Shown here: positions 24,464-63,700 of the stretch, piece by piece
How positions within the stretch are numbered: position 1 is the stretch's first letter
How the letters are laid out: each line of letters begins with the position of its first letter
NCBI RefSeq assembly: GCF_001194135.2
Contig: NC_068987.1
Location: 465-64,464, forward strand
Direction: 5' to 3'
From: Octopus bimaculoides
Lineage: Eukaryota
Length of the DNA stretch: 64,000 bases
Translations under genes and position numbers: made by a program
Notes under the pieces: generated by a model
Databases searched by the model: none
Told to the model about the DNA's origin: nothing
The model's input: only the letters and a program-made list of their open reading frames with translations

Positions 24464-24473
24464 NNNNNNNNNN
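24464..24473. other. Assembly gap (10 N)
   Basis: Run of N. Confidence 1.
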
Positions 24474-37206: not shown

Positions 37207-39304
37207 TTAACCTCCAGAGTTTGACCCCGAGCAAAAGATTTTTTTAAAATAGGGTAATAGGTGTCAAACATGTAAACAGATATGAAACAAAATGCACGTT
37301 GGCGAATGGGAGCAGGGGGAGACGACACGGAAAATTCACATCGGGAATGTTCCAAGTCCTCTCACCACTTCCCCGTTTGTCGGCACAAATTTTTTCTTCA
37401 TGTTCGTTTACTACACATTATTTTACACCTAGTATACTATTGTTTTTCAATTTTTGTGACGGGGTGGATTCAGATAATTCACACGATCCAGTAACCTGAC
37501 AACTGGTCACAAAAATGAAGAAAAAAAATAGTGTACTAGGTGTAAAACAACATGTAGTAAACGAATATGAAAAAAAAAATGCATGCTGGCGAACGGGAGA
37601 GCACTCGGAAAATTCACACAATCCGAAAACTCAACGTTAACACCTGGTCACAAAAAGTAAAAAAAAAAGTAGTGTAATAGGCGTTAAACATGTAGTAAAG
37701 GAATATGGGCAAAAAAGTGCGTGCTGGCGAATGGGGGTGGGGTGGGAGAGGACTTGGAAAATTCTCTTGCCCAAGATGCCATGCAGTGGGACTGAACCCG
37801 GAACCATGTGGTTGAGAAGGATATCCATTTTGTTGAGGGAAAAAATCGGATCATATGAATTGCCCTGATCTCCCTCCCCTCCCACTTCGTCAGTAAGTGT
37901 CTTCAACCAATGCATTCTGAAGGCCGAAGGTGGCATTTCAGAAGAAAAATTATCTATGCTATAAACGAAGATGAAAACCAAAATGTGTGCACCAAATTTT
38001 CCCTATTCTGTCTTCTGCATAATGGTATTAACAGAAACAATTGCAGCATAGTTGCTTGTAAGCCATTCAAGAACTCACACACACACAAAAAAGAACCATT
38101 GCTTTCATTGTGACATTGAAATTTCATTTGTGTCTAAATATTTTCATTCTTTAAAACCCTGACAAAAATTTGTGCTGCATCTGTTTTGTCAGTGAACAAA
38201 GTCTCAGTTTCAAAGCGACAAAAAATATTCAGATTGAAATGAGATTTAAATGTTGCAGTGAAACTAACGGTTTTTTTTTTGGGGGGGGGGAGTTCTTGAA
38301 TTGCTTACAAACGTCTATGTTGCAATTGTTTCTGTTAAAACCATTATGCAGAAGACAGAATCGAAAAAATTTGGTGCACGCATTTTTGTTTTCATCTTTG
38401 TTTATAGCGTTGATAATTTTTCCTTTGAAATGCCACCTTTGGCCTCCAGGATGCATTGGTTGGCCCGAAGCTATAGTTGAAGACACTTGCTGGCGAACGG
38501 GGCTGAGGTGGGGAGGAAGACTAGGACAATTCACACGATACAATTTTTTTCCATCAGCAAAATGGATATTCTTCGTAACNNNNNNNNNNNNNNNNNNNNN
38601 NNNNNNNNNNNNNNNNNNNNNNNNNNNNNNNNNNNNNNNNNNNNNNNNNNNNNNNNNNNNNNNNNNNNNNNNNNNNNNNNNNNNNNNNNNNNNNNNNNNN
38701 NNNNNNNNNNNNNNNNNNNNNNNNNNNNNNNNNNNNNNNNNNNNNNNNNNNNNNNNNNNNNNNNNNNNNNNNNNNNNNNNNNNNNNNNNNNNNNNNNNNN
38801 NNNNNNNNNNNNNNNNNNNNNNNNNNNNNNNNNNNNNNNNNNNNNNNNNNNNNNNNNNNNNNNNNNNNNNNNNNNNNNNNNNNNNNNNNNNNNNNNNNNN
38901 NNNNNNNNNNNNNNNNNNNNNNNNNNNNNNNNNNNNNNNNNNNNNNNTCTTCATAATCGTTTAGTACACATTATTTTTCACCTATTGCAATTTTTCTTCT
39001 CTTTTTTTTTTTTGTTTTTTTGGTAGTCGGGTTACTGGATCGTGTGAATTATCCGAGTCCGCACCCAACTCACCCCATCACAAAAATTGAAAAAACAATC
39101 GTATACTAGGTGTAAAATAATGTGTAGTAAATGAACATGAATAAAAAAAATTGCGCCGACGAACGGGAAAGTGGTGAAAGGACTCGGAACATTCCTGATG
39201 GGAATTTTCTCAGTCGTCTCTCCCGCTCCCGTTCGACAGCGAACATTTTTTTTTCATATTCGTTTATTACATGTTGTTTTACACCTATTAACACTGGAAG
39301 TTAA
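37207..39304. mobile_element. ~2.1 kb TTAA-flanked palindromic (foldback) element spanning an assembly gap
   Basis: TTAA|CCTCCAG ... CTGGAAG|TTAA; 37255-37570 is the reverse complement of ~38950-39290, and ~37815-38160 of ~38215-38579; centre near 38185; internal sub-repeats. Confidence 0.75.
38580..38947. other. Assembly gap (368 N)
   Basis: Run of N inside the right arm of the foldback. Confidence 1.
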
Positions 39305-43204: not shown

Positions 43205-43873
43205 ATGAGCAGTTCCTTATTTCAGCACAAGCTTATTCACACAGGAAAGAAACCATATCACTGTGATATCTGTGGTAAAACATTCTCTGAAAGTGGTCAT
43301 TTAACTTCTCACAAACGTGTTCACACTGGAGAAAGACCATACCGCTGTGAGATCTGTGGTAAAAATTTCTCTCAAAATAGCAATTTATCTCTCCACAAAT
43401 ATATCCACACTGGAGAGAAACCATATCACTGTAATATTTGTGGTAAAACATTCTCTCTAAATGGTAATTTATCATCCCACGTACGTATCCATACAGGAGA
43501 AAAACCATACCACTGTGAGATTTGTGGCAAAGCATTTTCCCAAAATGGTAGTTTGTCTTGTCACAAACGTATTCACACAGGTGAGAAACCATATCACTGT
43601 GATATCTGTGGCAAAACATTTTCACACAACCATAATTTATCTAATCACAAACGTATCCACACTGGTGAGAAACCTTACCATTGTGATATCTGTGCTAAAA
43701 CATTCTCTCAGAATAGCGTTTTAAGTACTCATAAACATATCCACACAAGAGAGAAACCATATCACTGTGATATATGTAATAAAACCTTCTCTCAAAAACG
43801 TTATTTGTTTTCCCATAAACGTATCCACACAGATGGGAGATCACACCAATGTGATGGTAGCTTAATGATATGA
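43205..43873 (+). CDS. Poly-C2H2 zinc-finger ORF (ZNF gene 4), 222 aa, 7 intact fingers; possibly a pseudogene
   Basis: Seven C2H2 units; starts at a Met inside finger 2 of the ancestral frame; acceptor AG 42645-42646; AATAAA at 43895 and 43912. Confidence 0.7.
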   Translation: MSSSLFQHKLIHTGKKPYHCDICGKTFSESGHLTSHKRVHTGERPYRCEICGKNFSQNSNLSLHKYIHTGEKPYHCNICGKTFSLNGNLSSHVRIHTGEKPYHCEICGKAFSQNGSLSCHKRIHTGEKPYHCDICGKTFSHNHNLSNHKRIHTGEKPYHCDICAKTFSQNSVLSTHKHIHTREKPYHCDICNKTFSQKRYLFSHKRIHTDGRSHQCDGSLMI

Positions 43874-43959
43874 CAACTGGTCACTGAGATGAAAAATAAA
43901 AACCTACATGGAATAAAATATGTATTTTTTTTTTTTCATTCTGACAGATTTACAATATG

Positions 43960-46900
43960 ATGTAGCGCCATTCTTGTTGAACCTTGTTTTATATTATTTG
44001 TAAAGCTCCAACATCTTTAAATCAGAGCTCACTGAATCTTTCTTAGATACTCTGTGTATCTGTTACGTCATACATCATGAGATCATGATGTCACATCTTA
44101 ACGTAAAGTCACTTCCATTACATCTCCCATCTTTACAAACATTGCAAGGGATTGGAACTTGAATCATCAACTTCAAATAAATTTAGTTATATATTCATTA
44201 TCATTCTGATAAAGCAACTTTCTTCAGAGTCCATGAATATATCTTCTTTAGATTTAACTGTCCATAAATGAATTTTTTTTTTTCCATTAAGTAAATAATC
44301 TCTTTAACTTCTTTAAACATGGAAAGAATAATGAAATATGCTTTCAGGCAATTAACACAGTTCAACTTCTTTAACTTGAAATCAAACACTTAACACAGTT
44401 CATGAATCTCTCTTTTCATAGAGCACTTCTCGAATTCAACAGTTCTTAATATCAATCTCAATATTCTGGCATGTTGATTTTTCGTTTGGATCTTGTAGTT
44501 TGATTACAGATAGTGTCTCTAGCCTCAGACTCATCTGTATCGTAGTCTCTTCACATTCTCCATTTGGCTAAGCTGTTGGATTCTTAGCAGCTGTCCACAG
44601 ATGACAACGATTTCATCAATACTTGTCTTCTATCTGACGTCTGTTGGATCTTGGTGCGTCATCCACTGATTTTTTTCAACTCCAGGCTTCCATGTCTGAT
44701 TTCCTTGAATCCTGACTTGCCGCCCATGAGTTAAGTGAGGTAACTCTCTAATACCTCTGTCGCTGTAGTAATTTTACTGGTCTTGACGTGCTTTCAGCTG
44801 ATCATGTAGCTGGTTCTTCTGTACTTGAGGTTTCAGCAAGGCATCGGACACAGTTGAGCGACTTTTCAGACGCCTGCTCATTAGCATTTGAGCTGGTGAT
44901 AGATTGACTATGTCAACCGGTGTCTTTCTGTACTCAAGTAAAGCCAAGTAGACATCTCAGGCACTGGCTTCTGCTTTCTTGAGCAGACTTTTTACTGTCT
45001 GAACTGTGCGCTCAGCTTGTCTGTTTGGGTGTGTCAGACTTGATGTTGTGTGTTTGAAATCCTTTTCTAGACCAAAGTTACGGAACTCTGCATTCGTAAA
45101 CTGTGGTTTGTTATCTATCATGAGCTCACCTGGGATGCGGTGTCTGGCAAAGACAGATTTCACTGCCGTAACTGTCGTTTTACTTGATAGGCCAGACAAT
45201 TTCAGGGTACTTTGAGAAATAGTCGATACACACCAGGTAGTCAATGTTCTTATACACAAACAAGTTGGCTCCGACTTTGGCCCATGGTTGATCAGGAATT
45301 TCATGGCTCTTCCATGGTTGTTTCGGATTACTCTTTCTATTCTTGTTGCACACAGAACATTGTGATACAAATTCTTCAATTTGTACAGTCATTCCTAGCC
45401 AGAAGCTAACTTCTTTGACTCTGAGTATGCACTTTGTCACTCTGAAATGAGCATCATGAATTCTCTTCCATATTCCTGTTTGTAGTGTTGCAGGAACTAC
45501 AACTTTGTCAGCTTTAAAGATGAGGTCATCAATAAAAGTCAATTCACCTCGACTATTCCAGTAGTCTTTCACACTTGCTGAAACATATTTTCTATTTTCT
45601 GGCCATCTGCACAGAATCACTGATTTCAGCTGTTGCAGTTGTGGATCTGCAATCACTGGCAATCCGGAATTCACTTAACTTTCCTGAAGTTATCAACAGT
45701 TGTGATATTAGCTCCCGCATCACACTCACTTTCATCAAACCAATCATTACTGGCTTGAAGATATGCCCTGCTCAAGGAATCTGCAACAGTCAGTTCTTTG
45801 GATGATACTTCTGTAAACACAGCAACATTCTCTGCAACCTGCTCAAGGGTTTCTGAAATATGATTTCACGGGACTTGTGATCAGTTTCTACTGTTTTTCC
45901 ATAGATGTACTGATGAAACTTCTCACATCCATGTAGGATACCATCTCTTTCTCAGTCTATGCATACTTCGTTTGCTCACTTGTCAGCAACTGCTAAATTG
46001 AACGCTATAGTCTTGTCAGCTTGCATTAACACTGCTCCTAGCCCTTTGGAGCTTGCATCCACTGAGAACATGACTGGCTTTGTAACATCAAAGTACTGTA
46101 GTACTGGAGACTCTGTCACTCTTTGTTTCAAATTCTTGAAACGTGTTTGCTGCCTTCCTTCCCAGTGCCATGCAATGTCCTTCGGCAATAACTCTTGTAG
46201 AGCTGCAATTTTACTAGAGACACTTGGTATGAACTTTCCCAGATACTCTATCATATCATGGAATCTCATCAGATCTGTTTTGTTTTCAGGCTCAGGCATT
46301 CCTCGGATAGCTTTCACCTTTCCAGGATTTGGCTTCAGTCTCTTGTCAGTGAGTAGATGCCCTACACATGCGGCCTCCATCATTCTCTGCTTGCATTTCT
46401 TTGCATTCCATTTCAGGCCACTTGACTGTATTCTATTCAGAATGGCATGCAGTCTTTCATCATGTTGCTTGACATCTGTACCCCACACCCAGATGTCATC
46501 AACAATACATTCTGTGCCTGATAAACCTTCTAGGATCTGTGACATTGTTCTTTGAAATACCTCTGGCGCTGACTTCACTCTAAAAGGTAGTCAAGTGGAT
46601 CGGTATCTACTGAATGGAGTATTGAAGGTACACAATTTGGAACTATTTTCATCAAGTTGTATCTGCCAAAATCCAGACTCTGCATCAAGAACGGAGAACA
46701 GTTTGGCACCTGGCATTCGTGACATAATTTCCTCAACAGTTCTCATGGCATGCATCCAAGTCCCTGGAACTGCTCTGGATATTCTCCCAGTATGTCTGTA
46801 TTCATTTTCTGAATGCTGTGAACTCACTGAACCAACTTCAATTTCTCACAGGGTTTCCTTCCCAGTATACTTGGACAGTTTTCCTCCACAACCCAGAATA

Positions 46901-48001
46901 CTACTTCATTCAAAGTGCCACTGATTTCACTTGATACTCTCTGTCCAAGTGAGAATGACTTTTCTTCAAAGTATGACACAAGTTTCACTTTTGAGTCGAA
47001 CATTGATTTGGAAATGATATTGCACTGTACACCTGTATCCAGTTTGACTTCAGTGGTTTCTTGTAGATTAATAAAGTCTCATACCTGTCTTCATTATTTT
47101 CATCGGTGGTCATCTGTCCAGGGAATACTTCAATTTTCTCTCTCTAGCGTCTCTACATTTTACACATGCTGGCAAAATGATGTTTACCACTGTATTTGCC
47201 ACAAACTTTTCTTGCAGCAGGACACTTGTCTTTAGCATGTTTCTAACCACACTCTCTATACTGAGAGTATTTTTTTTGGTTCAACCTTTAGGTTCATACT
47301 TCTTGGATCCCTCCTGGCATTCATTTCATTAAATATAGTTGATTGTTCATCATTAAGAACTTTCAATTGTGCTCTGATTTCTGTAGCTCTACACATCTGT
47401 ACAGTTTTTTTTCCAAATCAAGATCATGTTCTCAATAACCGCGTTCTCAGGCTATCACTAAGAATTCCACAGACGATTCTGTCTTTAATGAGCCCTTCAT
47501 TCAATGTCCCAAACTCACAAGTTCTAAATTTATTCTTTAAATCTATCAAATACTGATCAATTGATTTACCTGGTTTCTGAGATTGTGTGAAAAATGCATG
47601 TCTCTCAATATTCAGATTTTTCTTAGGTTCACAGAATTCCCGAAACTTTTGTTTCACTTTGTTGTGATTATTGCTATCCACTTCCTCACTCCACTCAAAA
47701 GTGCTATACACTTGAACTGCAGCCTCTCCTACCACTTGTAGTAAAGTAGAATGCTTCACATTCTGTGATTTTGTTGCAATTCCATTAGCCGTAAGGTATA
47801 GTTCAAACCTTTGTTCTCGGCTATGTTGCCTTTGAGATTAATCTCATTCAGGCAATTATTCAATCCCTCCTCTGACACCATCTAAGTTATGACATGATAC
47901 AGGGCACAGCCATTACTATACATATTTCTTACATCATACATCACAAACTTGTGATGTCACACTTTGTGTGTACATCTTAATGTAAAGTCACTTTCATTAC
48001 A
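43960..48001 (-). mobile_element. Full-length but decayed Ty3/Gypsy (Mag-like) LTR retrotransposon
   Basis: gag (FCEPKKNLNIERHAFFTQSQ...LIKDRIVCGI), protease (KLDTGVQCNII), RT (LDAESGFWQIQLD; CIVDDIWVWG), RNase H (VDASSKGLGAVL), integrase (PWAKVGANLF, DNKPQF); PBS TGGTGTCAGAGGAGGGATT at 47862-47880; PPT AAAGATGGGAGA next to 44122; LTRs ~47881-48001 and ~43961-44122; ATATG at 43955-59 and 48002-06 is a possible TSD. Confidence 0.93.
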
Positions 48002-48170
48002 ATATGGACATGAAATACCTAAACCAGTAAAGCTACCTTTCTTGCATTCATTGAGAAATACCTTTAAAATCTTTTTATACCAACTGCCTGAAACTATCCT
48101 TCTATGATACAAACTTCCTGTTTTAAAATGATCTAAAATAAAATTGTTTACTAAAAAGACCGGTGATTGT

Positions 48171-48215
48171 CGTGCACTGATGATGGGTAAATACCTAGAA
48201 ACCTGGGTCTGTGCG
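48171..48215 (+). ncRNA. Minimal type I hammerhead ribozyme (Penelope-type) with intact core and GUC cleavage triplet
   Basis: CGUGCA-CUGAUGA-UGGGU(AAAU)ACCUA-GAA-ACC(UG)GGU-C-UGUGCG: 6-bp stem I, 5-bp stem II, self-complementary stem III ACCUGGGU; predicted cut after C48209. Confidence 0.8.
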
Positions 48216-48369
48216 TATCATGTCAGGTCGAAGATGTGGGAAGGATGGCTTCCCATTGCAAATACTGATAGGGCACAGAAAGTGTGTCAATAGCCAGCTG
48301 GAGGAGATGTCCTCCTGGAACTACAAGCTACAGTAGCATCTACCCTTAGTGGTTAGCCACATTTAATAG

Positions 48370-48780
48370 GTGTAGGAGTGGCTGTATGGTAGCTTGCTTA
48401 CGAACCACATGGTTCTGGGTTCAGCCCCACTGCGTGGCACCTTGAGCAAGTGTTTTCTACTATAGCCTCGGGCTGACCAAAGCCTTGTGAGTGGATTTGG
48501 TAGACGGAAACTGAAAGAAGCTTGTCGTATATATATGTATATATATATAAATAAATATATATATATATGTTTGTGTGTCTGTGTTTGTCCCCCCCAACAT
48601 CGCTTGACAACCGATGCTGGTGTGTTTACGTCCCTGTAACTTAGCAGTTCGGCAAAAGAGACCGATAGAGTAAGTCCTAGGCTTACAAAGAATAAGTCCT
48701 GGGGTCAGTTCGCTTGACTAAAGGTGGTGCTCCAGCATGGCCACAGTCAAATGACTGAAATAGGTAAAAGAGTAAAATTT
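48370..48780 (+). mobile_element. Composite tRNA-derived SINE: tRNA-like head, (TA)n, then reverse-oriented CORE-like segment
   Basis: Head GGAGTGGCTGTATGGTAG...CCACTGCGTGGCACCTTGAGCAAGTG; after the microsatellite, CTTGACAACCGATGCTGG...CCAGCATGGCCACAGTC, also present at 63380-63560 and (reverse) 63770-63990. Confidence 0.75.
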
Positions 48781-49949
48781 CATGTACATTTATTCTAAAA
48801 AGCTGCTTGGTAATGACTTTTAGTTATTTTACTAAATTTATTGAAACCAAGACAGTATCTCAACAAAAAGGTTATTACTGTGTCAGAGCATCAGTGTTCT
48901 GTCTGTCATCAAAGATAACATTACACATACCAACAGATTGTACTCAACTGATTTTCTTCAGTTGCCATCGATCTACTTTTACAACTAATCTCCCATCACA
49001 GTTCAACTTAGTTTGATGACAGGTGTTCATAAAGAAATTAGATTCTGTAGATTTTATTAAAGTTTTGAAAATGAAATGCATTTTAATATACACTGACTTT
49101 ATTATCCTTCAATGTACAAAGTGACTGTGGTGCCAGGCAAGAGGTTGGAGTATGATAGTGGGACAGAGATAGCTGTCTTACTAGTGAGGAGATACTTGGC
49201 TACCGCAGGAGGACTCTATCAAACAGTTCAACCCATAGCTAACATTGAAGATGGACATTAAATGATGATGTCAAATGGTCTCATTGAAACAGTTATCTCC
49301 CTTACTCCGCAAAAGTCTCTTAAGCTCTGCGCCATCAACGCATTTAATTCTACTTTGGCAAAAAAACAAGTTTTTCTTACATAAATACGTGGTCAGTATC
49401 TCTTTGTAATTAAAAATAACGTTATTTGGTAAATCAACATGGGATTATCACTATATTCATTAGAAATAACAACCAAATCTTCCTCAAATTACACATTGTC
49501 TCAAAAGGAAGGACACATTGGATAACGTAATTCTAAGATATACTATGTACTGAAAAGTGCCAAACAGTGTCACAGCTTAATCCGTCTTGGTTGTATGTCT
49601 GCTGGATCAGGACTAAAGGCTGAGCAACAACAAAGAAGGATGTGTTGGATAATCTCAACTTCGATGTATCATAACTGAAGTTGTAAAAACAGGGATAATG
49701 TTTGATCACAGATGTACTGCATTAGGTTTGACCTGGAGCTAGAAATTAGTAATATTGGTTGAATGGTAGAGAAAATGTGATTAGTCTATCCTGCCATGAC
49801 TGAATTTGCCTTTCATCCTTTAAGTGATTGAGAAAATAAGGATCAATAATGTTCTAGGTTGGTTTGACTGTTAACTCTACAACACACCATTACTCAAAAA
49901 TAGGTTATCTATGTAATAAAATAATTTATACAGAACTATATTTGCCATT

Positions 49950-50095: not shown

Positions 50096-52039
50096 ACCTC
50101 TTGTGATGGACCAGCCTTCCAATCTGAGGAAATGTTGGCCTGCTTGCCTAGCTAGCATCATTTGACAGCTAAAGGGGTGCAAAGAGCATTGTGACTAGTG
50201 AGGTATAACAACATCTGATAGTCAATCACAGGATCATATCCTTGCTATGAAAAGTATGCCTCAGTCACATAATAATGTCATTTAACTTAGATAAAGTTGG
50301 TTTTGAAAGAAAGGCAACTTTTTGTCTCAATCAAAAATATTTTCTCTGTTTTGGATTTTTAAATTTTGTAAATAGCTTGGTCAGAGGAGGAAGGGTCATA
50401 CCCATAGCCATTTTTAGGGTCTATAAGACTGGTAGGTCTTCTGTACATCTTGCAAGAACATTGAGACTGACATGATTGGTGTTACACCTGAACAGCTGCA
50501 GGTAAACATTTTCTGGGGATGAAGGATTATGAATGGTGGTAAGTGGAGACAATGTGTGTGAGTTGGGAGTGTTTATGTTGACATCGACCCAGCTAACTGC
50601 AAGAGGAAAAATCAGAGAAAGAGGAGAGAGAGGACATCTGTGGAACAGTTGAGTGGCAAGTGGCTTTTCTTTGGATGTAGTTTGTGGGTGCTTGGGTGCA
50701 GAGCAGCAGCAGCACTGTTCCAAGGATGTGATCAGTGGGGCTTACACTTGATTTTTGTAGTGAGTCAACAGCTGATTAGGACTGAAGTATTTTGGGGTTT
50801 AAAAGCTGAATGTTGGTCTTAGCAGTTCAGTTTTGGCAGTCTTATCTATGTAGGGGGTCACCATGAGACATCATCAAAGTGTAGGCTTTTTTAGGATTTT
50901 AGTTGTATGTTGTTCACGGTTAGAGAAGGTGAGAGGCAAGGTGTAAGTTTGGCTGAGGTGAAAGCAAAAAATGTAATTAAGAAGCTTGCTTCCTCCTAAC
51001 CACATGGTTTTGATTTTAGTTTCACTGCACAGAACCTTGTTTTCCACTATAGTTCTGAGTCAACCAAAGTCTTTTTGTTGGAGTCGAGAGTCAGAAAGTG
51101 GATCCAATTTCCATGCTGGTATGGGTTGGATGGATTGACAAGAGCTGGTGAGCCAGAGGACTGCAGCAGACTCTGTTGTCTGCTTTGGCATGTGTTCTAT
51201 GGCTGGGTACTCTTTCTAATACCATACCCCGGGTACTTTTTATGTTGCCAGGTAACTTTCAAGACAAGACCCTGAACTGAAGGGGAATAAGATAGGGTGA
51301 TAGAGACAGGTGTCTTGCAGTGGAGATTCATGGTGAGCTCAGTTGGAAAGAGAGAGAAAGAACATGACCCCTCAAGTTACAGGGAGGGGGATGACAGTGA
51401 ACTGGTACAAAGGTCTGGCTAGGATGAATGAGAAGGTGAGTTTGTGTGAGTGCAAAAGGAGAGGGAAAGTTAGAGGGAAAGAGAATTCAGTGTGGAGTGA
51501 AGAGAGGTGGAGGAGGAGTTAGGAAGAGATTCGTCAGGGACAGATTGTGTGCAGAGGCATAGAAATAAATGGCATACCATTAGGCCCCCATTTTAACTTA
51601 GATGAGCAAGTCTTCTCATGCACAATAAATCACCAATCATTTCAGTCCTTTGTCATCTCCAAGATGTTCAACATCTGAAGCTCATTTTTCACTACATCAT
51701 CTCAAATCTTTGTCTTCCACAGAGTCTATACACATTTATGGTACATCTTAATACAGCATCATTGTCTTCAGCATCATTGTTTAATGTCTGTTTTCCAAGC
51801 TGGCTTGACAGGTGCTGGCCAGCTGGGGAGCTGTCCAGATTCCAAATGATCTGTTGTGGCATCGTTTCTACAGCTAGATGCCTTTCCTAATGCCAACCAC
51901 TTTACAGAGTATGCTTTTTACATGCTTCCCGCATGGGTGCACATATGCAGCACTGGTACGAGTGCCTTTTCCAAGCCTATATGTACAGACGACAGTGATT
52001 TTACTTGGTTTGACACATCTTCTCAAGTACAACAAATTG

Positions 52040-55000
52040 CTACAGCTGCTGATCCCTTATCATTTTCTCAGTGAGGCCCAGCATCTGAAGATCCTTTCTC
52101 ACCACTTTGTCCCTTGTCTTCCACAGGTTCCCTCTACAAATAGAGCTCAGTACTTCTTTGTGCTGCTGTGCTCAACCACACACATCACATGACCAAACCA
52201 GCACAGTCTTCTCTCTCTTACATCGGATGCTTCTTACACCTAGTATTCCTCTTAAATCACCCACACTTTCTTGTGTGTGCACACTAACATTACTCAACCA
52301 GCAGAGAATGCTAGCCTCATTTCTTTCAATCCTTCGCAAGTCCTCTATAATTAAAACTCATGTTTCACTACCATGTAGCATAGGCATCATACAATCTGCC
52401 TTTCACGCTGAGGGAGAGACCCTTAGTTACCAACAAAGACAGAAGCTCTCTGAACGTTGCCCAGCCTGTTCTTATTCTAGCAACTACACTTTTAGAACTT
52501 CCTCCACCACTACTAATTCAGTCACCTAGGCAACACAAGCTATCTATTACTTCTAATGATCCCCCTGAGCATTTCTAGTGCTTATTGTACCCACACATTT
52601 ATCACATACAAAGTCTATCTTTTTCATTAACCTTCCTGTGACATTGCTACACCTCTTATGTATCCAAAGCTTGCACTGGCTACAACATATGGAGTTTCTA
52701 CCAAAAACCTTTCTTACATATCGAGCAGGGCCATCTCCCTGACAGTTCCTGTGATTTGTCTGTTTTCCTATTTACTATAAGTTTGGTTTTAGTTAAATTA
52801 ACTCTAAGGCCCTTAGATTCCACACCTGAAATTTCTTCTCTAGTTCTCAGTGATTCAGCTTCATCCATATAAAACACATGACCATACCAGTAGTCTTTTC
52901 TGTTGCACACTATATCTGACGCCTCTTCTACCCAATTTTTTAAAACACATTTACACTTTGACATACAAGCACATCCATTGGAGCATGCTAGCTTCATTTT
53001 TCTTTTGAGCCTTTGCATGTCCTCTACAGTTGCAGTCCACATTTCACTACCATGTAGCATAGCTGTTCGTACACATGCATCATACAATCTGCCTTTCACC
53101 CTGAAAGGAAGGCCTTTTGTTACCAACAAAGATAATATCTCTAAACTTTTCCCAGCTGGATCATATTCTAGCAATTATGCTTCCAGAAGTCCTCCTCCAC
53201 TGCTAATTAGGTCACCAAGATGACAGAAACTGTTTATTACTGCCATTGATCCTCCTGTCTTCTTAATCTTTATTGTTCCTGCATATTTGTCACAAAGACT
53301 ACTTTCTCTTTTTAACCCTCTTATGATTCCACTGCACTGCTTATGTGCTCATAGCATGCACTGAGTACTCTATGGAATTTCTACATAATGAGCCTGGCCA
53401 TTTCCTTCAAAGAATCAGTAATTTGCCTGCTTTCCTTTGGTCTTTGTTAAATTAACTGCAAGGACTTTTAATTCTAGGCTTTGCTTCCACTTCTGCAATT
53501 TCTTCTGTATTTCTACCACAAGTTCAGCTATAAGAACAAGGTCGTCAGCATAGAGGAGCTCCCACAGGCAACCAGTCTTAAATTCCTCTGTTAAAGGTTG
53601 GAGGACTATGATAAGAGGAGACTGAGAACTGATCCCCAGTGAACTTTTACCTGCACACAAAATTCATTGCTATACTCATTCCACCTTACAGATAGTATCC
53701 CTTGGGGAGTTCTCACCAGCCCCTAGCTTCTGCAATGACACCAGTTGAGAGGGAAAAAGACCTTGTCAAAGACTTTGTCCATATCAACAAATGCTTTTCC
53801 TGCAGTTGCCTTACTAGGAAGATAACACCAGTAGTCTTTCTCCATGGCACAAAATGAAACTGCTTCTCGTCTATGTTAATTCACTTTCTAATTAGTTGAG
53901 CGATGACCGTTTCTGTAACTTTCATGACCTGGTCCAGCAATTCGGTACCTCTATAATTACTTGTCTACAGTAGGGATCACCAAACTATGGCCCACAAGGT
54001 CAGTTCATCCGGTCTGCCATCACACAGTACTTTTTGTGTAAGAACCTGCAACGAGAGTTCATTTGCCTCTGGTATCAGTGTTTGGAACAACTTATGTCTG
54101 TGAGCAAACATTTTCAATAATGATGTGAAATCAACACACCAAACGATATTGACTGATGAACATTTGAAAGCAATGCTCTTGGTTGGACGCAGCAATTCCA
54201 AAGCAAATATTTATATCTTAAAAGCTAAACACCAGTTTCACAAACCTCACTAACCCTTTTTTTTTTTTTGCTGCTTAGTTTGAGCAAAATGGTTATGTGG
54301 CCCACACTTGTCATTCTCTGTTATCCGGTCTGCCAAAGAAAAAAAAAAATTTGGTGACCCCTGGTCTAGAACACCTCCCTTACCTTTATGGCAGTTGGCT
54401 ATAATGCTGCTACATAAGTTATTGTGTATGATATCTTCCTGGAAAACCTAATCAACTGTACAGGTGACTAGGCCATATTCTAATCATCTTGGTGATAATT
54501 CCTGATGGACCAGGGGCTTTTCCTATCCTTAATTGCTTTATCTATTATACTGCTGTCAACTTGGATAGCTGGTCTGTTTGTTGGATCCACATCCAGAAGA
54601 CTCTCCTCCCATGCCTTCACCACAATTAGCAGCCTTCCATAGTGACCACCCCATGCCTCGTTTTATTCTGAATCACTAAGTGCAAGTCTTCCCATCGTTC
54701 CACCCAACCACACACTCTTCTCCTAAAACATAATTCACTCTGACAGACGGTCTTGTAACTATGCAACAAAACAGTGACCTCTTCCTTTTTGCTTTCCCCT
54801 AGCAAAATATACTCGTTGTCTAGCTTCTTTTCTAGCTGCCCCGTATACTACCCCCACTCATCCATCATGTCACTCTTTGCCTGGTTGGAACTTTGCACTG
54901 GCCAAGTGTTGGGCCTGGAGTTTATGCTATACATCTCCATCTCCTTGTCAAATGCTTTAATTAGGACATCTGGAAATCTTTAACTATTCAATGGATCCTT

Positions 55001-55680
55001 AAGCTTCCATACTTTCCTTTTCCAGACTGCTTTGTCTTTCAGATTCCTAACCTGAAGTTATGTTAGGGAGTACATTCTTCACTTGAGATGGTTTATGAGT
55101 ATCCATCTATCTCACTTTCTGGTGAGAACATAGTCAATCTGGTTTGTGTATCCACCACATTGATAGGTGATCAGGTGACTGGCTGGTTTCCTGAAGTTAA
55201 TGTTGCAAATCATTAGGTCATTTGCATCACAAAACTCTAAATCCTTCACCTCCTTGTACACCATGGAAGCCAGCAAGATACTCCCCATATGGCCACTGAA
55301 GTGGCCAGTCAAGAAGATAAGATTAATGTCATTTATTGTTGAGATAGTCTGCAAAAGGGCAACATATAATTGATCCTTTTGTTAATCTGGCAGTTCTGTT
55401 TGATGAGTATAGGCAGAGGGAATAGTTGTATTTACCAAGACTTGTCTAAGTACAAGAACCTATAATACAGACTGACTGCCTTGATCACTTTATCCACCCA
55501 TTTCACAACTAAAAGAATGCTGTCAGTATTGCCTTCCCAGATTTTATGTGTATGCTCTTAGTTGGTGAGGAGTTTGCCTGAGGCTCCTTTCCGTCTTACC
55601 TCTGGCATATAGTATACATCTACATGCCTCCAGTTTAGCATTTCAACAATCTCACCAGATCTTTTCAATGTGCCTACACA
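52040..55680 (-). mobile_element. Near full-length decayed RTE LINE (APE endonuclease + RT)
   Basis: Endonuclease start VGTLK.SGEIVEML at ~55670; ICNINFRKPASHLITY..GG.TNQIDYVL; ELLYADDLVLIAE; RLYDACVRTAMLHGSEMW; many disablements; SINE tail at 51770-52040. Confidence 0.88.
53971..54363 (+). mobile_element. hAT (Charlie/SPIN-like) non-autonomous element nested in the RTE
   Basis: TIRs TAGGGATCACCAAA / TTTGGTGACCCCTG; flanks GTCTACAG and GTCTAGAA (NTCTAGAN-type 8-bp TSD, imperfect); internal remnant LTDEHLKAML of the hAT transposase C-terminus. Confidence 0.8.
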
Positions 55681-57454
55681 AGGATACAGACACACACACA
55701 TCATCATCATTACCATTTAATGTCTGTTTTCCATGCTGAAATGGGCTGGATGGTTTGACAGGAGCTGGCAAGCCAGAGGACTGTGCCAAAGTTTACTGCC
55801 TGCTTTGGCCTAGTTTCTACAGCTGGATGCCCTTCTTGTAGCCAACCACTTCACAGAGTGTGGACTGGAAGCTTTTTACATGGCACCAGCAAGGTCAGCA
55901 ACTAACTTGCAAGACAAGACCCCTCGACAGGAGAGTAGTATTGAGGGAAGTGCGTTTGTATAAGGTGATGAGAGATTCAATATATTTACACACATACATA
56001 TCATCATAGTTCAATGTTCACTTTTCCATGCTTACATGGGTCAGACAGAATGTTATAGAAGATATTCTACTGCCAGATGTCCTTCCTGTTGACAACTTTC
56101 ACTTGTAATATTTCCCCCAAGGCCAAGTATTTTTTGTGTAAGACTGAAAAGTAATATCATTTGCATGATGATGCTCATTTACCACCATCCATATGAAGAC
56201 AAGAGTATAAACAAGCACAGATGATGAGCCTCTTCCTGTATCCACCCCTACACATACACAAAAGGCATGGGTTGGCCTTAGGCTATTGTAGACACCTATC
56301 CAAGTTGCCATGCAGTGGGATCAACCCCCAGGATTATGTCATTGTGAAGTGAACTTCTTAACCATACTATAATATCCCTAGGATAAGTCTACCATATTTT
56401 GAGTTCTGATTCTCAGTCAACCTGCCCAAGATTTACCATAGTTCAGTTCCTTGCACTGACTATTGAATTCTAGCTTTCTTCATTCTTGTATGAAACCCCA
56501 GGACTATGCCATGCTCTCTTTTTCTCACTAACTAGCATTTTGATTTCAGCAATGTTGACCTTCAGGCTTTAAGACTGTAGACAATGCTTCCAGCTTTGGA
56601 ATTCTGCTTGACAGATTTTCCCAGGAGAATTAGAATCATTAGCATACATAAATACTCAATGTCAATTAGTGCAGAACTCAAGAACTATAAGATTAAAATG
56701 CAGCTAAGAGAACTCTGATGAATACTTGCCTTTACACTAAACTTCGCACAGAACATGCTGAGAACCCGACTTTTGCTGACAGCACCTTCCTACATAGCTT
56801 CATAAACTCTACAAGTCTTAGTATCATCTGCATCAAATATACTTAGTACCCCAAAACTCAGTCAAAGACCTATATCAGAAAAAAAAGAACAGCATGTTCT
56901 TTACCAAGAAATATTCTTGTAACTGTCTCATTGAAAATACAGCATCTGTACTCTCACATCTCGGCACAAACTCAAACTGCATTTTGAAGATTTTTTTAGA
57001 TGTTTTCGAAGCTGGTATGAGTATTTAAAAATTAAGTTTTATTTTTGTATTTTAACTTAATTTTATTATCATTTTCAATACATTTACATAAGATAGTTAT
57101 ATTTGCTGTCATCATTGACAGCACAAATACACTAATCATAAATAGAAAATACTCAAAATAGTTGCAGTAGAAGTTTTGTAGTGTTTACGTCTATTTCACA
57201 AGTTTTCTTCTGAATTTAATTTGATGTGTCTTTCACAAGAATCTCATTGTAACTTAATCCTGTCACAATATGATGTCTCTCTCTCATAATTTCATTGTCA
57301 CTTGAATATCTCTGCTATGGTGAAGTGAGCCACAAGAATCTCTCATTGGAATTTTTTTTTTTTAATAGAATTTCACCATTCTATGGATTACTTTCCAGGT
57401 GTATCTGTCTATGATGAGAAATATATTGGAAGACAGTTTTCTCTCAAAACAATG

Positions 57455-63655: not shown

Positions 63656-63700
63656 TGTCACTGAAGAGGTCACAGATGTGTGGCGAAAGAATTCTGGACA
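63656..63700 (+). ncRNA. Decayed Penelope-type hammerhead motif (cleavage site mutated)
   Basis: UGUCA-CUGAAGA-G-GUCACA(GAUG)UGUGGC-GAA-AGAAUUCU-G-GACA: intact core, 6-bp stem II, palindromic stem III, but G at position 17. Confidence 0.6.

What the first reader, a model, noticed from the sequence alone, without database searches (positions are those of the whole stretch)
48171..48215. Intact minimal hammerhead ribozyme immediately downstream of a zinc-finger gene
Seen in sequence: every conserved core nucleotide (CUGAUGA, GAAA, UH) is present with a GUC triplet, a 6-bp stem I (two G-U), a 5-bp stem II with a 4-nt loop, and stem III ACCUGGGU, which is self-complementary. Established: short type I hammerheads with palindromic stem III are typical of Penelope-like elements and tend to cleave as dimers. 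Inference: it is on the same strand as ZNF gene 4, and with the Gypsy insertion (43960-48001) removed it sits only ~255 nt after the stop codon and ~210 nt after the AATAAA signals. It could have been a 3'-UTR or post-poly(A) self-cleavage site affecting ZNF mRNA stability or termination, later displaced 4 kb by the retrotransposon. No Penelope ORF or second copy is visible beside it. The U-A pair at the base of stem II is non-canonical and may lower activity.
Basis: partly seen in the sequence, partly recalled or inferred. Interest (0 to 1): 0.8.

Follow-up and report, generated by a model that had tools for sequence, protein, structure and literature searches.

The report
Retroelement-derived hammerhead ribozyme relic in octopus
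The hammerhead ribozyme motif is really there, but it is a truncated, untranscribed copy of a dispersed ribozyme-carrying retroelement family that landed behind the zinc-finger gene together with a SINE, so it is an ordinary transposon relic and not a regulator of that gene.

Summary
The motif at 48171-48215 (+) is exactly as described. It is the only hammerhead in the window, where chance predicts 0.003-0.04. It is not a gene-specific device. Bases 48156-48366 are a fragment of a repeat family, cut short at both ends. That family has roughly 50-450 copy-equivalents of the hammerhead segment in three related species, and tens of thousands of copies of its 3' module. In the family consensus stem II has a G-C pair where the window has G-U, and stem III is the perfect palindrome ACCCGGGU. 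In RNA reads from other copies the first stem I pair is G-C where the window has A-U. No invariant core position varies among those reads. The fragment directly abuts a full-length SINE (48369-48777), and both sit inside one older repeat that resumes at 48778. This fits a single insertion, probably a template-switch chimera. Partial reads of three RNA-seq runs give zero reads over the unique flank 48002-48085, and ZNF transcripts end near 43880-43970. No other ZNF ORF in the window (four confirmed) has such a motif. No Rfam hammerhead model matches. Verdict: a new member of the known type I hammerheads of Penelope-like elements and retrozymes, most likely inert here. Interest is low.

The parts
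48171..48215 (+). Minimal type I hammerhead motif. Stem I 48171-76/48210-15; CUGAUGA 48177-83; stem II + loop 48184-97; GAAA 48198-48201; stem III 48201-08; predicted cleavage after C48209.
   Evidence: chance expectation
48163..48221 (+). Extended hammerhead. Internal loop 1 (U48168-G-U48170 / U48216) and a closing helix GUGAU/AUCAU beyond the 6-bp stem I. The consensus C at 48221 turns G48163-U into G-C.
   Evidence: read; variant 48221 T>C; outer helix present in the MFE of the consensus-corrected 81-mer
48156..48366 (+). Fragment of a hammerhead-bearing repeat family, truncated at both ends. Other copies continue upstream (...GGGACCCCTTCGCATCG) and downstream (GGTGGCAAATATACTTCAC...).
   Evidence: depth profiles and loose-end consensus; no continuation in the window
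48237..48366 (+). High-copy 3' module of the family, roughly 100-fold (20- to 300-fold by run) more abundant than the hammerhead segment. Other copies are transcribed. It contains the hairpins UGGGAAGGAUGGCUUCCCA and GGAGGAGAUGUCCUCC.
48369..48777 (+). Full-length SINE with a tRNA-like head, an internal (TA)n tract and an A-rich tail, in the same orientation and directly abutting the hammerhead fragment. It is extremely abundant (summed depth in the millions).
48075..48155 (+). Left part of an older high-copy repeat ('R1') that hosts the composite insertion.
   Evidence: (flank consensus)
48778..48795 (+). R1 resumes here. TTTCATGTACATTTAT matches the R1 downstream consensus TTTCATGTTAATTTAT 14/16, and is the only such match in the window.
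43205..43873 (+). Last C2H2 zinc-finger ORF block of the upstream gene (stop codon 43871-43873). AATAAA at 43895 and 43912.
   Evidence: weak RNA coverage ending about 43882-43970
44048..48001 (-). Degraded LTR retroelement. An integrase zinc-binding domain lies on the minus strand at 45180-45674. The LTR-like ends 44048-44122 and 47915-48001 are only about 80% alike. The left boundary is uncertain.

Best explanation
The motif is a genuine hammerhead sequence, inherited from a family of hammerhead-carrying retroelements of octopus genomes. That family is either the 3'/pseudo-LTR region of a Penelope-like element or its non-autonomous 'retrozyme' derivative. From the published biology of such elements, the ribozyme cuts multimeric or read-through transcripts to unit length. 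Its stem III is too short to be stable in one molecule. Two copies therefore pair through the palindrome ACCCGGGU into a double hammerhead with an 8-bp stem III. The copy in this window is a by-product, not a working element. A 211-bp internal piece of the element's RNA (48156-48366) was most likely copied after the reverse transcriptase finished a SINE RNA and switched template. The chimera then integrated in a single event into an older repeat, about 170 bp past the present end of the LTR element. It lacks the family's 5' and 3' ends and has no partner copy. It carries C>T changes at 48196, 48204 and 48210, the last two at CpG sites. These weaken stem II, spoil the stem III palindrome and favour a competing hairpin. 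It is not detectably transcribed. It therefore most likely does nothing at this locus. Shown: the motif, the family membership, the truncations, the nesting, and the lack of RNA in the sampled runs. Inferred: the dimer mechanism, the template switch and the inactivity.
For: Motif and its rarity by chance. Multi-copy family in three species: single-copy depth is 14-16 in X1, against about 800-1200 on 48160-48230, and 92-178 matching contigs per run. Boundaries: homology starts at 48155/6 and ends at 48365/6, while other copies run on. Majority variants improve the ribozyme: 48196 T>C (52-78% of depth) makes G-C in stem II, and 48204 T>C (59-69%) makes CCCGGG. In RNA reads from other copies 48176 is G in 20/20 reads and 48210 is C in 22/27. 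That is a G-C pair where the window has A-U, changed on both sides. U7, the one free core position, varies in 40-60% of depth. None of the 12 invariant core positions is among the 15 variable positions (P=0.03). 48203 C>T and 48206 G>A, which could only pair between two molecules, both occur in the same read sets. The ViennaRNA optimum for a dimer of the consensus-corrected 45-mer is a double hammerhead with an 8-bp intermolecular stem III. For the window sequence it is not. Nesting: R1 flank consensus, and its unique 14/16 match at 48778, immediately after the SINE tail (0.26 matches expected in the whole window). No transcription. Literature: canonical metazoan type I hammerheads have helix I of 6 bp, helix II of 4 bp, and a 1-2 bp helix III with a palindromic loop, and act as dimers (PMC4209133). 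They reside in non-LTR retrozymes and co-occur with PLEs (PMC7229834; bioRxiv 10.64898/2026.07.22.740005). PLEs are abundant and recently active in Octopus (PMC13282606).
Against: No Rfam hammerhead covariance model reports the motif, even at E<=10. No Penelope ORF, pseudo-LTR partner or tandem unit is present in the window, so the parent element type is not identified. Family sequences could be seen only as variant tables and 30-nt loose-end consensuses from Logan contigs. Linkage between variants is therefore not established, and copy numbers are rough. Only about 6% of each of three RNA runs was read, from unknown tissues, so low or tissue-restricted transcription is not excluded. The template-switch model rests on one junction. 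At that junction 2 nt (TA, 48367-48368) are unassigned, and the target-site duplication cannot be separated from the SINE's A-rich tail. The core is fully intact, so residual cleavage in trans or at high concentration cannot be ruled out.
Confidence: 0.82

Rival explanations
1. Exapted ribozyme. The hammerhead was, or is, used to cleave read-through ZNF transcripts downstream of the poly(A) signals, influencing termination or mRNA stability.
For: It is on the same strand as the ZNF ORF and 256 nt after the stop codon once the LTR element is removed. The core is fully intact. The locus is present in every sampled individual of the species. Hammerheads with roles in mRNA are known in amniotes (mentioned in PMC7229834).
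Against: No RNA reads fall on 43973-44130 or 48002-48085. The copy is a truncated passenger of a SINE insertion inside another repeat. It differs from the family consensus by changes that weaken it. No partner copy exists for dimerisation. The other ZNF ORFs in the window lack any such motif.
Confidence: 0.03
2. A still-competent element copy. The fragment is a functional unit of an active retrozyme or PLE that can be transcribed, self-cleave (in trans with RNAs of sister copies) and perhaps circularise.
For: The core is intact. Sister copies are transcribed at a low level (10-19 reads per run at >=80%). A subset of copies appears joined head to tail: the loose end after 48365 reads ...ACTTCACGATGTCGTGCA, which runs into the hammerhead 5' strand GTCGTGCA.
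Against: This copy lacks both ends of the family unit and abuts a SINE instead of the family's 3' end. No reads carry its private variants: all reads have G48176. A competing hairpin is predicted.
Confidence: 0.08
3. Chance occurrence of the hammerhead consensus in AT-rich intergenic DNA.
For: At 0.003 per 64 kb a 2-3 Gb genome would hold on the order of 100 chance motifs of this quality (extrapolated). No Rfam hit. The fold z-score is only -1.5.
Against: The motif lies in a repeat family whose consensus is a better hammerhead. That family varies at U7 but not at invariant core positions, and shows a two-sided change in stem I.
Confidence: 0.02
4. A C/D-box snoRNA-like element: UGAUGA as the C box with a terminal stem.
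For: Weak Rfam matches to snoU30 (14.8 bits, E=3.5) and sR55 (8.9 bits, E=6.5) over the CUGAUGAUGGGU stretch.
Against: The scores are far below gathering (45 and 35 bits). There is no CUGA D box before the 3' stem strand (the sequence is GUCUGUGCG). 45 nt is too short. The match is explained by the shared UGAUGA hexamer.
Confidence: 0.01

Closest known systems
Canonical metazoan type I hammerheads of non-LTR retrozymes (coral, mussel, axolotl; Cervera & de la Pena 2020, PMC7229834)
   Same: Open helix I of 6 bp followed by an internal loop and a closing helix. Helix II of 4-5 bp with a 4-nt loop. Very short helix III with a palindromic centre. Low-GC, multi-copy, species-specific repeat. A family 3' end that in some copies runs straight into the next hammerhead, implying a unit of about 220 bp. 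A weakened 10.1-11.1 pair also occurs in axolotl HHR_Amex2 (U-U).
   Different: Only one truncated unit is present here. A tandem arrangement is only hinted at, from loose-end consensuses. circRNAs were not tested. The base of stem II is U-A in the DNA copies. No octopus or cephalopod retrozyme turned up in the papers searched.
Hammerheads in the pseudo-LTRs of Penelope-like elements (Cervera & de la Pena 2014, PMC4209133; Craig et al. 2021, PMC8557442)
   Same: Type I topology, palindromic short helix III, and a presumed dimeric mode of action. Dispersed copies whose abundance rises toward the 3' end, as expected from 5' truncation. PLEs are abundant in Octopus (PMC13282606).
   Different: The 'min-HHR' of PLEs has a long helix II (6-8 bp), a bulged base at its 5' end, a 4-5 bp helix I and essentially no helix III. 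This motif has none of those traits. No RT/GIY-YIG ORF or second pseudo-LTR lies nearby.
Chimeric retrocopies made by template switching of a LINE-type reverse transcriptase (e.g. U6-L1 chimeras in mammals; my own knowledge, not checked here)
   Same: A full-length 3' partner (the SINE) is fused at its 5' end to an internal fragment of another RNA in the same orientation. The whole is inserted at one A/T-rich target, with the host repeat resuming exactly after the tail.
   Different: It is inferred from a single locus. The target-site duplication and the junction microhomology cannot be resolved.
Hammerheads embedded in vertebrate mRNAs or introns (HH9/HH10, rodent Clec2 3'-UTR; my own knowledge plus a mention in PMC7229834)
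   Same: A hammerhead close to a protein-coding gene, on the sense strand.
   Different: Those are conserved at orthologous loci and transcribed with the gene. This one is a repeat copy with no RNA coverage.

Membership tests
Hammerhead ribozyme (type I) | Invariant core C3 U4 G5 A6 N7 G8 A9 / G12 A13 A14 / A15.1-U16.1 / H17 | tested here: met
   All are present at 48177-48183, 48198-48201 and 48208-48209.
Hammerhead ribozyme (type I) | Three helices around the core, with helix I open and helices II and III closed | tested here: met
   Helix I has 6 bp plus an extension. Helix II has 5 bp. Helix III has only 3 bp around a 2-nt centre, so it is unstable as a monomer and needs a dimer.
Hammerhead ribozyme (type I) | G10.1-C11.1 pair at the base of helix II (usual, not absolute) | tested here: not met
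   It is U48184-A48197. The same holds for most DNA copies of the family. A or C occurs at 48184 in some copies without a matching change at 48197.
Hammerhead ribozyme (type I) | Score at or above the gathering threshold of an Rfam hammerhead covariance model | tested here: not met
   No hammerhead family is reported at gathering score, nor at E<=10 on 201 or 67 bases.
Hammerhead ribozyme (type I) | Helices supported by covariation among relatives | tested here: inconclusive
   48176/48210 is A-U in the window and G-C in the RNA reads. 48196 gives G-U versus G-C. 48203/48206 may change C-G to U-A. Linkage within single copies could not be read from the tables.
Hammerhead ribozyme (type I) | Site-specific self-cleavage after H17 | not testable with these tools
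   There is no pile-up of read ends at 48209/48210, but only 0-19 reads cover the site.
Penelope-like element (pseudo-LTR hammerhead) | Adjacent ORF with RT and GIY-YIG endonuclease | tested here: not met
   The ORFs of the window are C2H2 ZNFs, an LTR-element integrase and LINE-type RT remnants (YADD) on the minus strand about 4-8 kb away.
Penelope-like element (pseudo-LTR hammerhead) | A second hammerhead/pseudo-LTR in tandem or inverted nearby | tested here: not met
   There is no second copy of 48002-48366 in the window. The only other relaxed hit (63661-63694) is at chance level.
Penelope-like element (pseudo-LTR hammerhead) | min-HHR architecture: long helix II, 5' bulge, short helix I, no helix III | tested here: not met
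   The architecture is the 'canonical' 6 bp / 4-5 bp / short palindromic helix III described in PMC4209133.
Non-LTR retrozyme | Canonical type I hammerhead inside a short (170-400 bp), low-GC repeat | tested here: met
   The family segment is >=211 bp. The implied unit is about 220 bp. There are many copies in three species.
Non-LTR retrozyme | Head-to-tail tandem arrays | tested here: inconclusive
   The loose end after 48365 (...ACTTCACGATGTCGTGCA) runs into the hammerhead 5' strand in a subset of contigs and RNA reads. Other copies have a different upstream sequence. The window holds a single unit.
Non-LTR retrozyme | Expression as small circular RNAs | not tested
   This needs back-junction reads or northern/RT-PCR.

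The most novel reading that the evidence does not exclude
Octopus genomes harbour a so far undescribed, still expressed retrozyme-like family of about 220 nt. Its canonical type I hammerhead has a U-A (or mismatched) 10.1-11.1 pair and a CCCGGG dimerisation palindrome. RNA of this family is picked up by the SINE/LINE machinery through template switching. That would scatter intact ribozyme cores next to genes such as the expanded C2H2 ZNF clusters, where a few might be exapted.
Probability: 0.25. Interest if true: 0.4.

Novelty: new member of a known kind. Interest (0 to 1): 0.15.

Why it matters
It matters little for the ZNF gene. The result removes an attractive but unsupported regulatory story. 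It also shows that an intact hammerhead core next to a gene can be a retrotransposition by-product. Two modest points of value remain. First, it points to a hammerhead-bearing repeat family in octopods that the ribozyme papers I searched do not mention. That family could be mined for circRNA-producing retrozymes in a lineage known for unusual RNA biology. Second, the locus is a clean example of a ribozyme-element/SINE chimera. This bears on which reverse transcriptase can access these RNAs.

Tried and rejected
Several steps led nowhere or gave negative results.

- Rfam at gathering score, and at E<=10 on 201 and 67 bases, gave no hammerhead. It gave only weak snoRNA look-alikes caused by UGAUGA.
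- Self-BLAST of 48002-49200 against the window found no second copy of the hammerhead segment.
- I searched the window for the family's 3' continuation and for an intact copy of the host repeat R1. There were no matches.
- ORFs up to 8 kb downstream were scanned for a Penelope RT/GIY-YIG. Only LINE-type RT remnants turned up.
- I looked for an 'empty site' joint (43960->48001) in two related species. None was among the listed joints, which is inconclusive because 68 joints were not shown.
- I looked for read ends at the cleavage site in RNA-seq. There were too few reads.
- Junction-specific k-mer look-ups meant to date the insertion showed only that the locus is present in all sampled individuals of the source species.
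- I could not fetch sequences of other family copies. No eukaryotic genome collection is searchable here, so no covariance model of the family could be built.
- A second, relaxed hammerhead-like hit at 63661-63694 was set aside as chance (0.72 expected per window).

Full report
THE OBSERVATION. The sequence at 48171-48215 (+) is CGUGCA-CUGAUGA-UGGGU-AAAU-ACCUA-GAAA-CCUGGGUC-UGUGCG.
- Stem I has 6 bp, two of them G-U pairs.
- The CUGAUGA and GAAA core elements are complete.
- Stem II has 5 bp, a U-A pair at its base, one G-U pair and a 4-nt loop.
- Stem III is A15.1-C-C/G-G-U16.1 around a 2-nt centre.
- The cleavage triplet is GUC, with C17 = 48209.

A descriptor script finds this as the only hammerhead on either strand of the window. 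Simulated sequence with the window's dinucleotide content gives 0.04 hits per 64 kb for a loose descriptor. A descriptor as strict as this motif gives 0.003. Stem I also continues beyond an asymmetric internal loop (UGU/U) into a second helix, GUGAU 48163-67 with AUCAU 48217-21. This is the layout of the 'canonical' metazoan type I hammerhead described in PMC4209133.

Three cautions apply. No Rfam hammerhead model reports the site, even at E<=10 on 67 bases. Only weak snoRNA look-alikes appear, through the shared UGAUGA. The 45-mer's minimum free energy fold (-11.1 kcal/mol, z = -1.5) is not the hammerhead fold, for which stems I+II give -5.9. ACCUGGGU is self-complementary only with two central G-U wobbles.

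CONTEXT. The window is bases ~465-64464 of CM046607.1 in assembly GCA_001194135.2. To my knowledge this is Octopus bimaculoides. It is a cluster of C2H2 zinc-finger genes on both strands. The ZNF ORF upstream of the motif stops at 43873, and AATAAA signals lie at 43895 and 43912. Between it and the motif lies a degraded LTR retroelement with an integrase domain on the minus strand. Its two LTR-like ends are only about 80% alike over about 85 nt. It is also not obviously younger than the hammerhead copy.

THE MOTIF BELONGS TO A REPEAT FAMILY. I laid Logan contigs from DNA runs of the source species (organism A) and two related species (B and C) on the region.
- 48006-48073 is single copy, with depth 14-18 in run X1.
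- The hammerhead segment 48160-48230 has a summed depth of about 800-1200 in X1, about 6000 in X5 (single copy 56), about 22000 in X14 and about 12000 in X15. This corresponds to roughly 50-450 copy-equivalents at >=80% identity.
- 92-178 distinct contigs per run match the segment.
- Homology starts at 48155/6 and stops at 48365/6.
- Other copies continue upstream with ...TTGCATTGGGACCCCTTCGCATCG and downstream with GGTGGCAAATATACTTCAC.... Neither sequence is in the window, so the window copy is truncated at both ends.
- The 3' part, 48237-48366, is roughly a hundred times (20- to 300-fold, by run) more abundant, which means tens of thousands of copies. This rise toward the 3' end fits 5'-truncated retrotransposition, or a module shared with other elements.

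THE FAMILY CONSENSUS IS A BETTER RIBOZYME THAN THE WINDOW COPY. Majority variants among the DNA copies are listed below.
- 48196 T>C (52-78% of depth) turns a stem II G-U pair into G-C.
- 48204 T>C (59-69%) turns CCUGGG into the perfect palindrome CCCGGG.
- 48210 T>C (34-59%).

The last two window T's sit at CpG sites of the consensus, as expected for neutral decay. In RNA reads from other, expressed copies, 48176 is G in 20 of 20 reads and 48210 is C in 22 of 27. The first pair of stem I is therefore G-C in those copies and A-U in the window, a change on both sides that keeps the pair.

U7 (48181), the only free position of the core, varies in 40-60% of depth. None of the 12 invariant core positions is among the 15 variable positions in 48171-48236. 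The probability of that under random placement is 0.03.

48203 C>T and 48206 G>A both occur in the same read sets. Together they would give the palindrome CUCGAG. These two positions can pair only between two molecules. That hints at the dimeric stem III, although linkage within single reads could not be checked.

The U-A pair at the base of stem II is a family trait, not a private defect. Some copies have A or C at 48184 without a compensating change.

ViennaRNA predicts that two molecules of the consensus-corrected 45-mer form a double hammerhead with an 8-bp intermolecular stem III as their optimum. The window sequence instead prefers a hairpin, ACCUAG/CUGGGU, that buries GAAA.

HOW THE COPY GOT THERE. 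Directly 3' of the fragment lies a full-length SINE in the same orientation (about 48369-48777). It has a tRNA-like head and an A-rich tail, and its summed depth is in the millions.

Directly 5' lies a piece of another high-copy repeat, which I call R1 (about 48075-48155). Its consensus continues ...CCTTCCATCAAAATTTCATGTTAATTTATG in other copies. The window's only match to TTTCATGTTAATTTAT with two or fewer mismatches is at 48778-48793, the first base after the SINE tail. Only 0.26 such matches are expected in the whole window.

R1 is therefore split exactly by the pair 'hammerhead fragment + SINE'. The simplest reading is one target-primed reverse transcription event at an AAAA/TTT site. The enzyme copied the SINE RNA to its 5' end and then switched to an RNA of the hammerhead family. 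It copied 211 nt of that RNA before the event ended.

This part is inference. Two bases (TA, 48367-68) at the junction are unassigned, and the target duplication cannot be separated from the SINE tail. The locus is present in all sampled individuals of the species.

TRANSCRIPTION. I used three RNA-seq runs of the species, kept as raw reads, with about 12 million reads examined in each.
- No read covers the unique stretch 48002-48085.
- At >=90% identity, 0-5 reads touch the hammerhead, and all of them carry G48176, so they come from other copies.
- The ZNF gene is weakly expressed. An RNA contig ends at 43882, one fragment reaches about 43970, and nothing lies on 43973-44130.
- At >=80% identity, 10-19 reads per run cover the family's hammerhead segment. 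They show no pile-up of ends at 48209/48210, but there are too few reads to judge cleavage.

COMPARISON WITH KNOWN SYSTEMS. Type I hammerheads with a very short, palindromic helix III are long known in metazoan repeats and act as dimers (PMC4209133, PMC6765202). The 'canonical' form has helix I of 6 bp, helix II of 4 bp and loop-loop contacts. It resides in non-LTR retrozymes, which are short tandem repeats of 170-400 bp expressed as circRNAs, found for example in mussel (PMC7229834). A 2026 preprint derives these from PLE pseudo-LTRs (10.64898/2026.07.22.740005). PLEs carry hammerheads in their pseudo-LTRs and are typically 5'-truncated (PMC8557442). They are abundant and recently active in Octopus vulgaris (PMC13282606).

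The motif here matches the canonical/retrozyme architecture, not the PLE 'min-HHR', which has a long helix II, a 5' bulge and no helix III. In a subset of contigs and RNA reads, the sequence after the family's 3' module (...ACTTCACGATGTCGTGCA) runs into the hammerhead's 5' strand GTCGTGCA. That suggests head-to-tail units of about 220 bp. Other copies have a different upstream sequence, and the window holds one unit only.

No RT/GIY-YIG ORF lies nearby. The RT remnants about 4-8 kb downstream are LINE-like and on the other strand. I therefore file the motif as a relic of a hammerhead-bearing retroelement of the PLE/retrozyme kind, without deciding between the two.

VERDICT. The family itself is a modestly interesting lead for retrozyme/circRNA work in cephalopods. 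The papers I searched that treat hammerheads do not mention octopus. As a finding about this locus it is ordinary.

Noticed in passing
window 1-64000 (= CM046607.1 ~465-64464): The window is the very first ~64 kb of a 110.5-Mb chromosome-scale record. The C2H2 ZNF cluster therefore lies at an assembly (possibly chromosome) end.
   Followed up: partly
63661-63694 (+): A second, relaxed hammerhead-like string: CUGAAGA, a bulged G, a 6-bp stem II, GAAA, GAAUUC, and a stem I of only 3 bp. It lies between two SINE fragments. It superficially resembles a PLE min-HHR, but the relaxed descriptor expects 0.72 hits per window by chance.
   Followed up: partly
48237-48366 (+): This 130-bp module is present at tens of thousands of copy-equivalents in three species, with other copies transcribed. 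It contains a hairpin UGGGAAGGAUGGCUUCCCA, and a sub-family reads GGGAACGAUGAUUUCCC at the same place, which may be covariation. Some contigs show inverted joints inside it.
   Followed up: partly
48100-48144 (+) and flanks: A fragment of another very abundant repeat ('R1'; depth up to about 24000 in X1 and about 96000 in X14), also represented in RNA reads. Its type was not identified.
   Followed up: no
52000-56500 (-): Decayed LINE-type reverse transcriptase remnants: a YADD motif, several repeated C-terminal blocks such as KGLPFRVKGRLYDACVRTAMLHGSE, and a weak RVT_1 hit at 53415-53660.
   Followed up: partly
44048-44122 vs 47915-48001: The supposed LTR pair of the 'Gypsy' element shares only about 80% identity over about 85 nt, with a 13-nt indel. 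Repeat depth begins near 44074, not 43960. The element is old or incomplete, and its left boundary is uncertain.
   Followed up: partly
24464-24473 and 38580-38947: Two runs of N (assembly gaps). The ORFs listed at 38170-39026 overlap the second gap and are artefacts.
   Followed up: no
48168-48183 in other genomic copies: One Logan contig in each of two runs of the source species carries a local duplication, CGTGCACTGATGA-CGTGCACTGA, of the hammerhead's 5' half.
   Followed up: no
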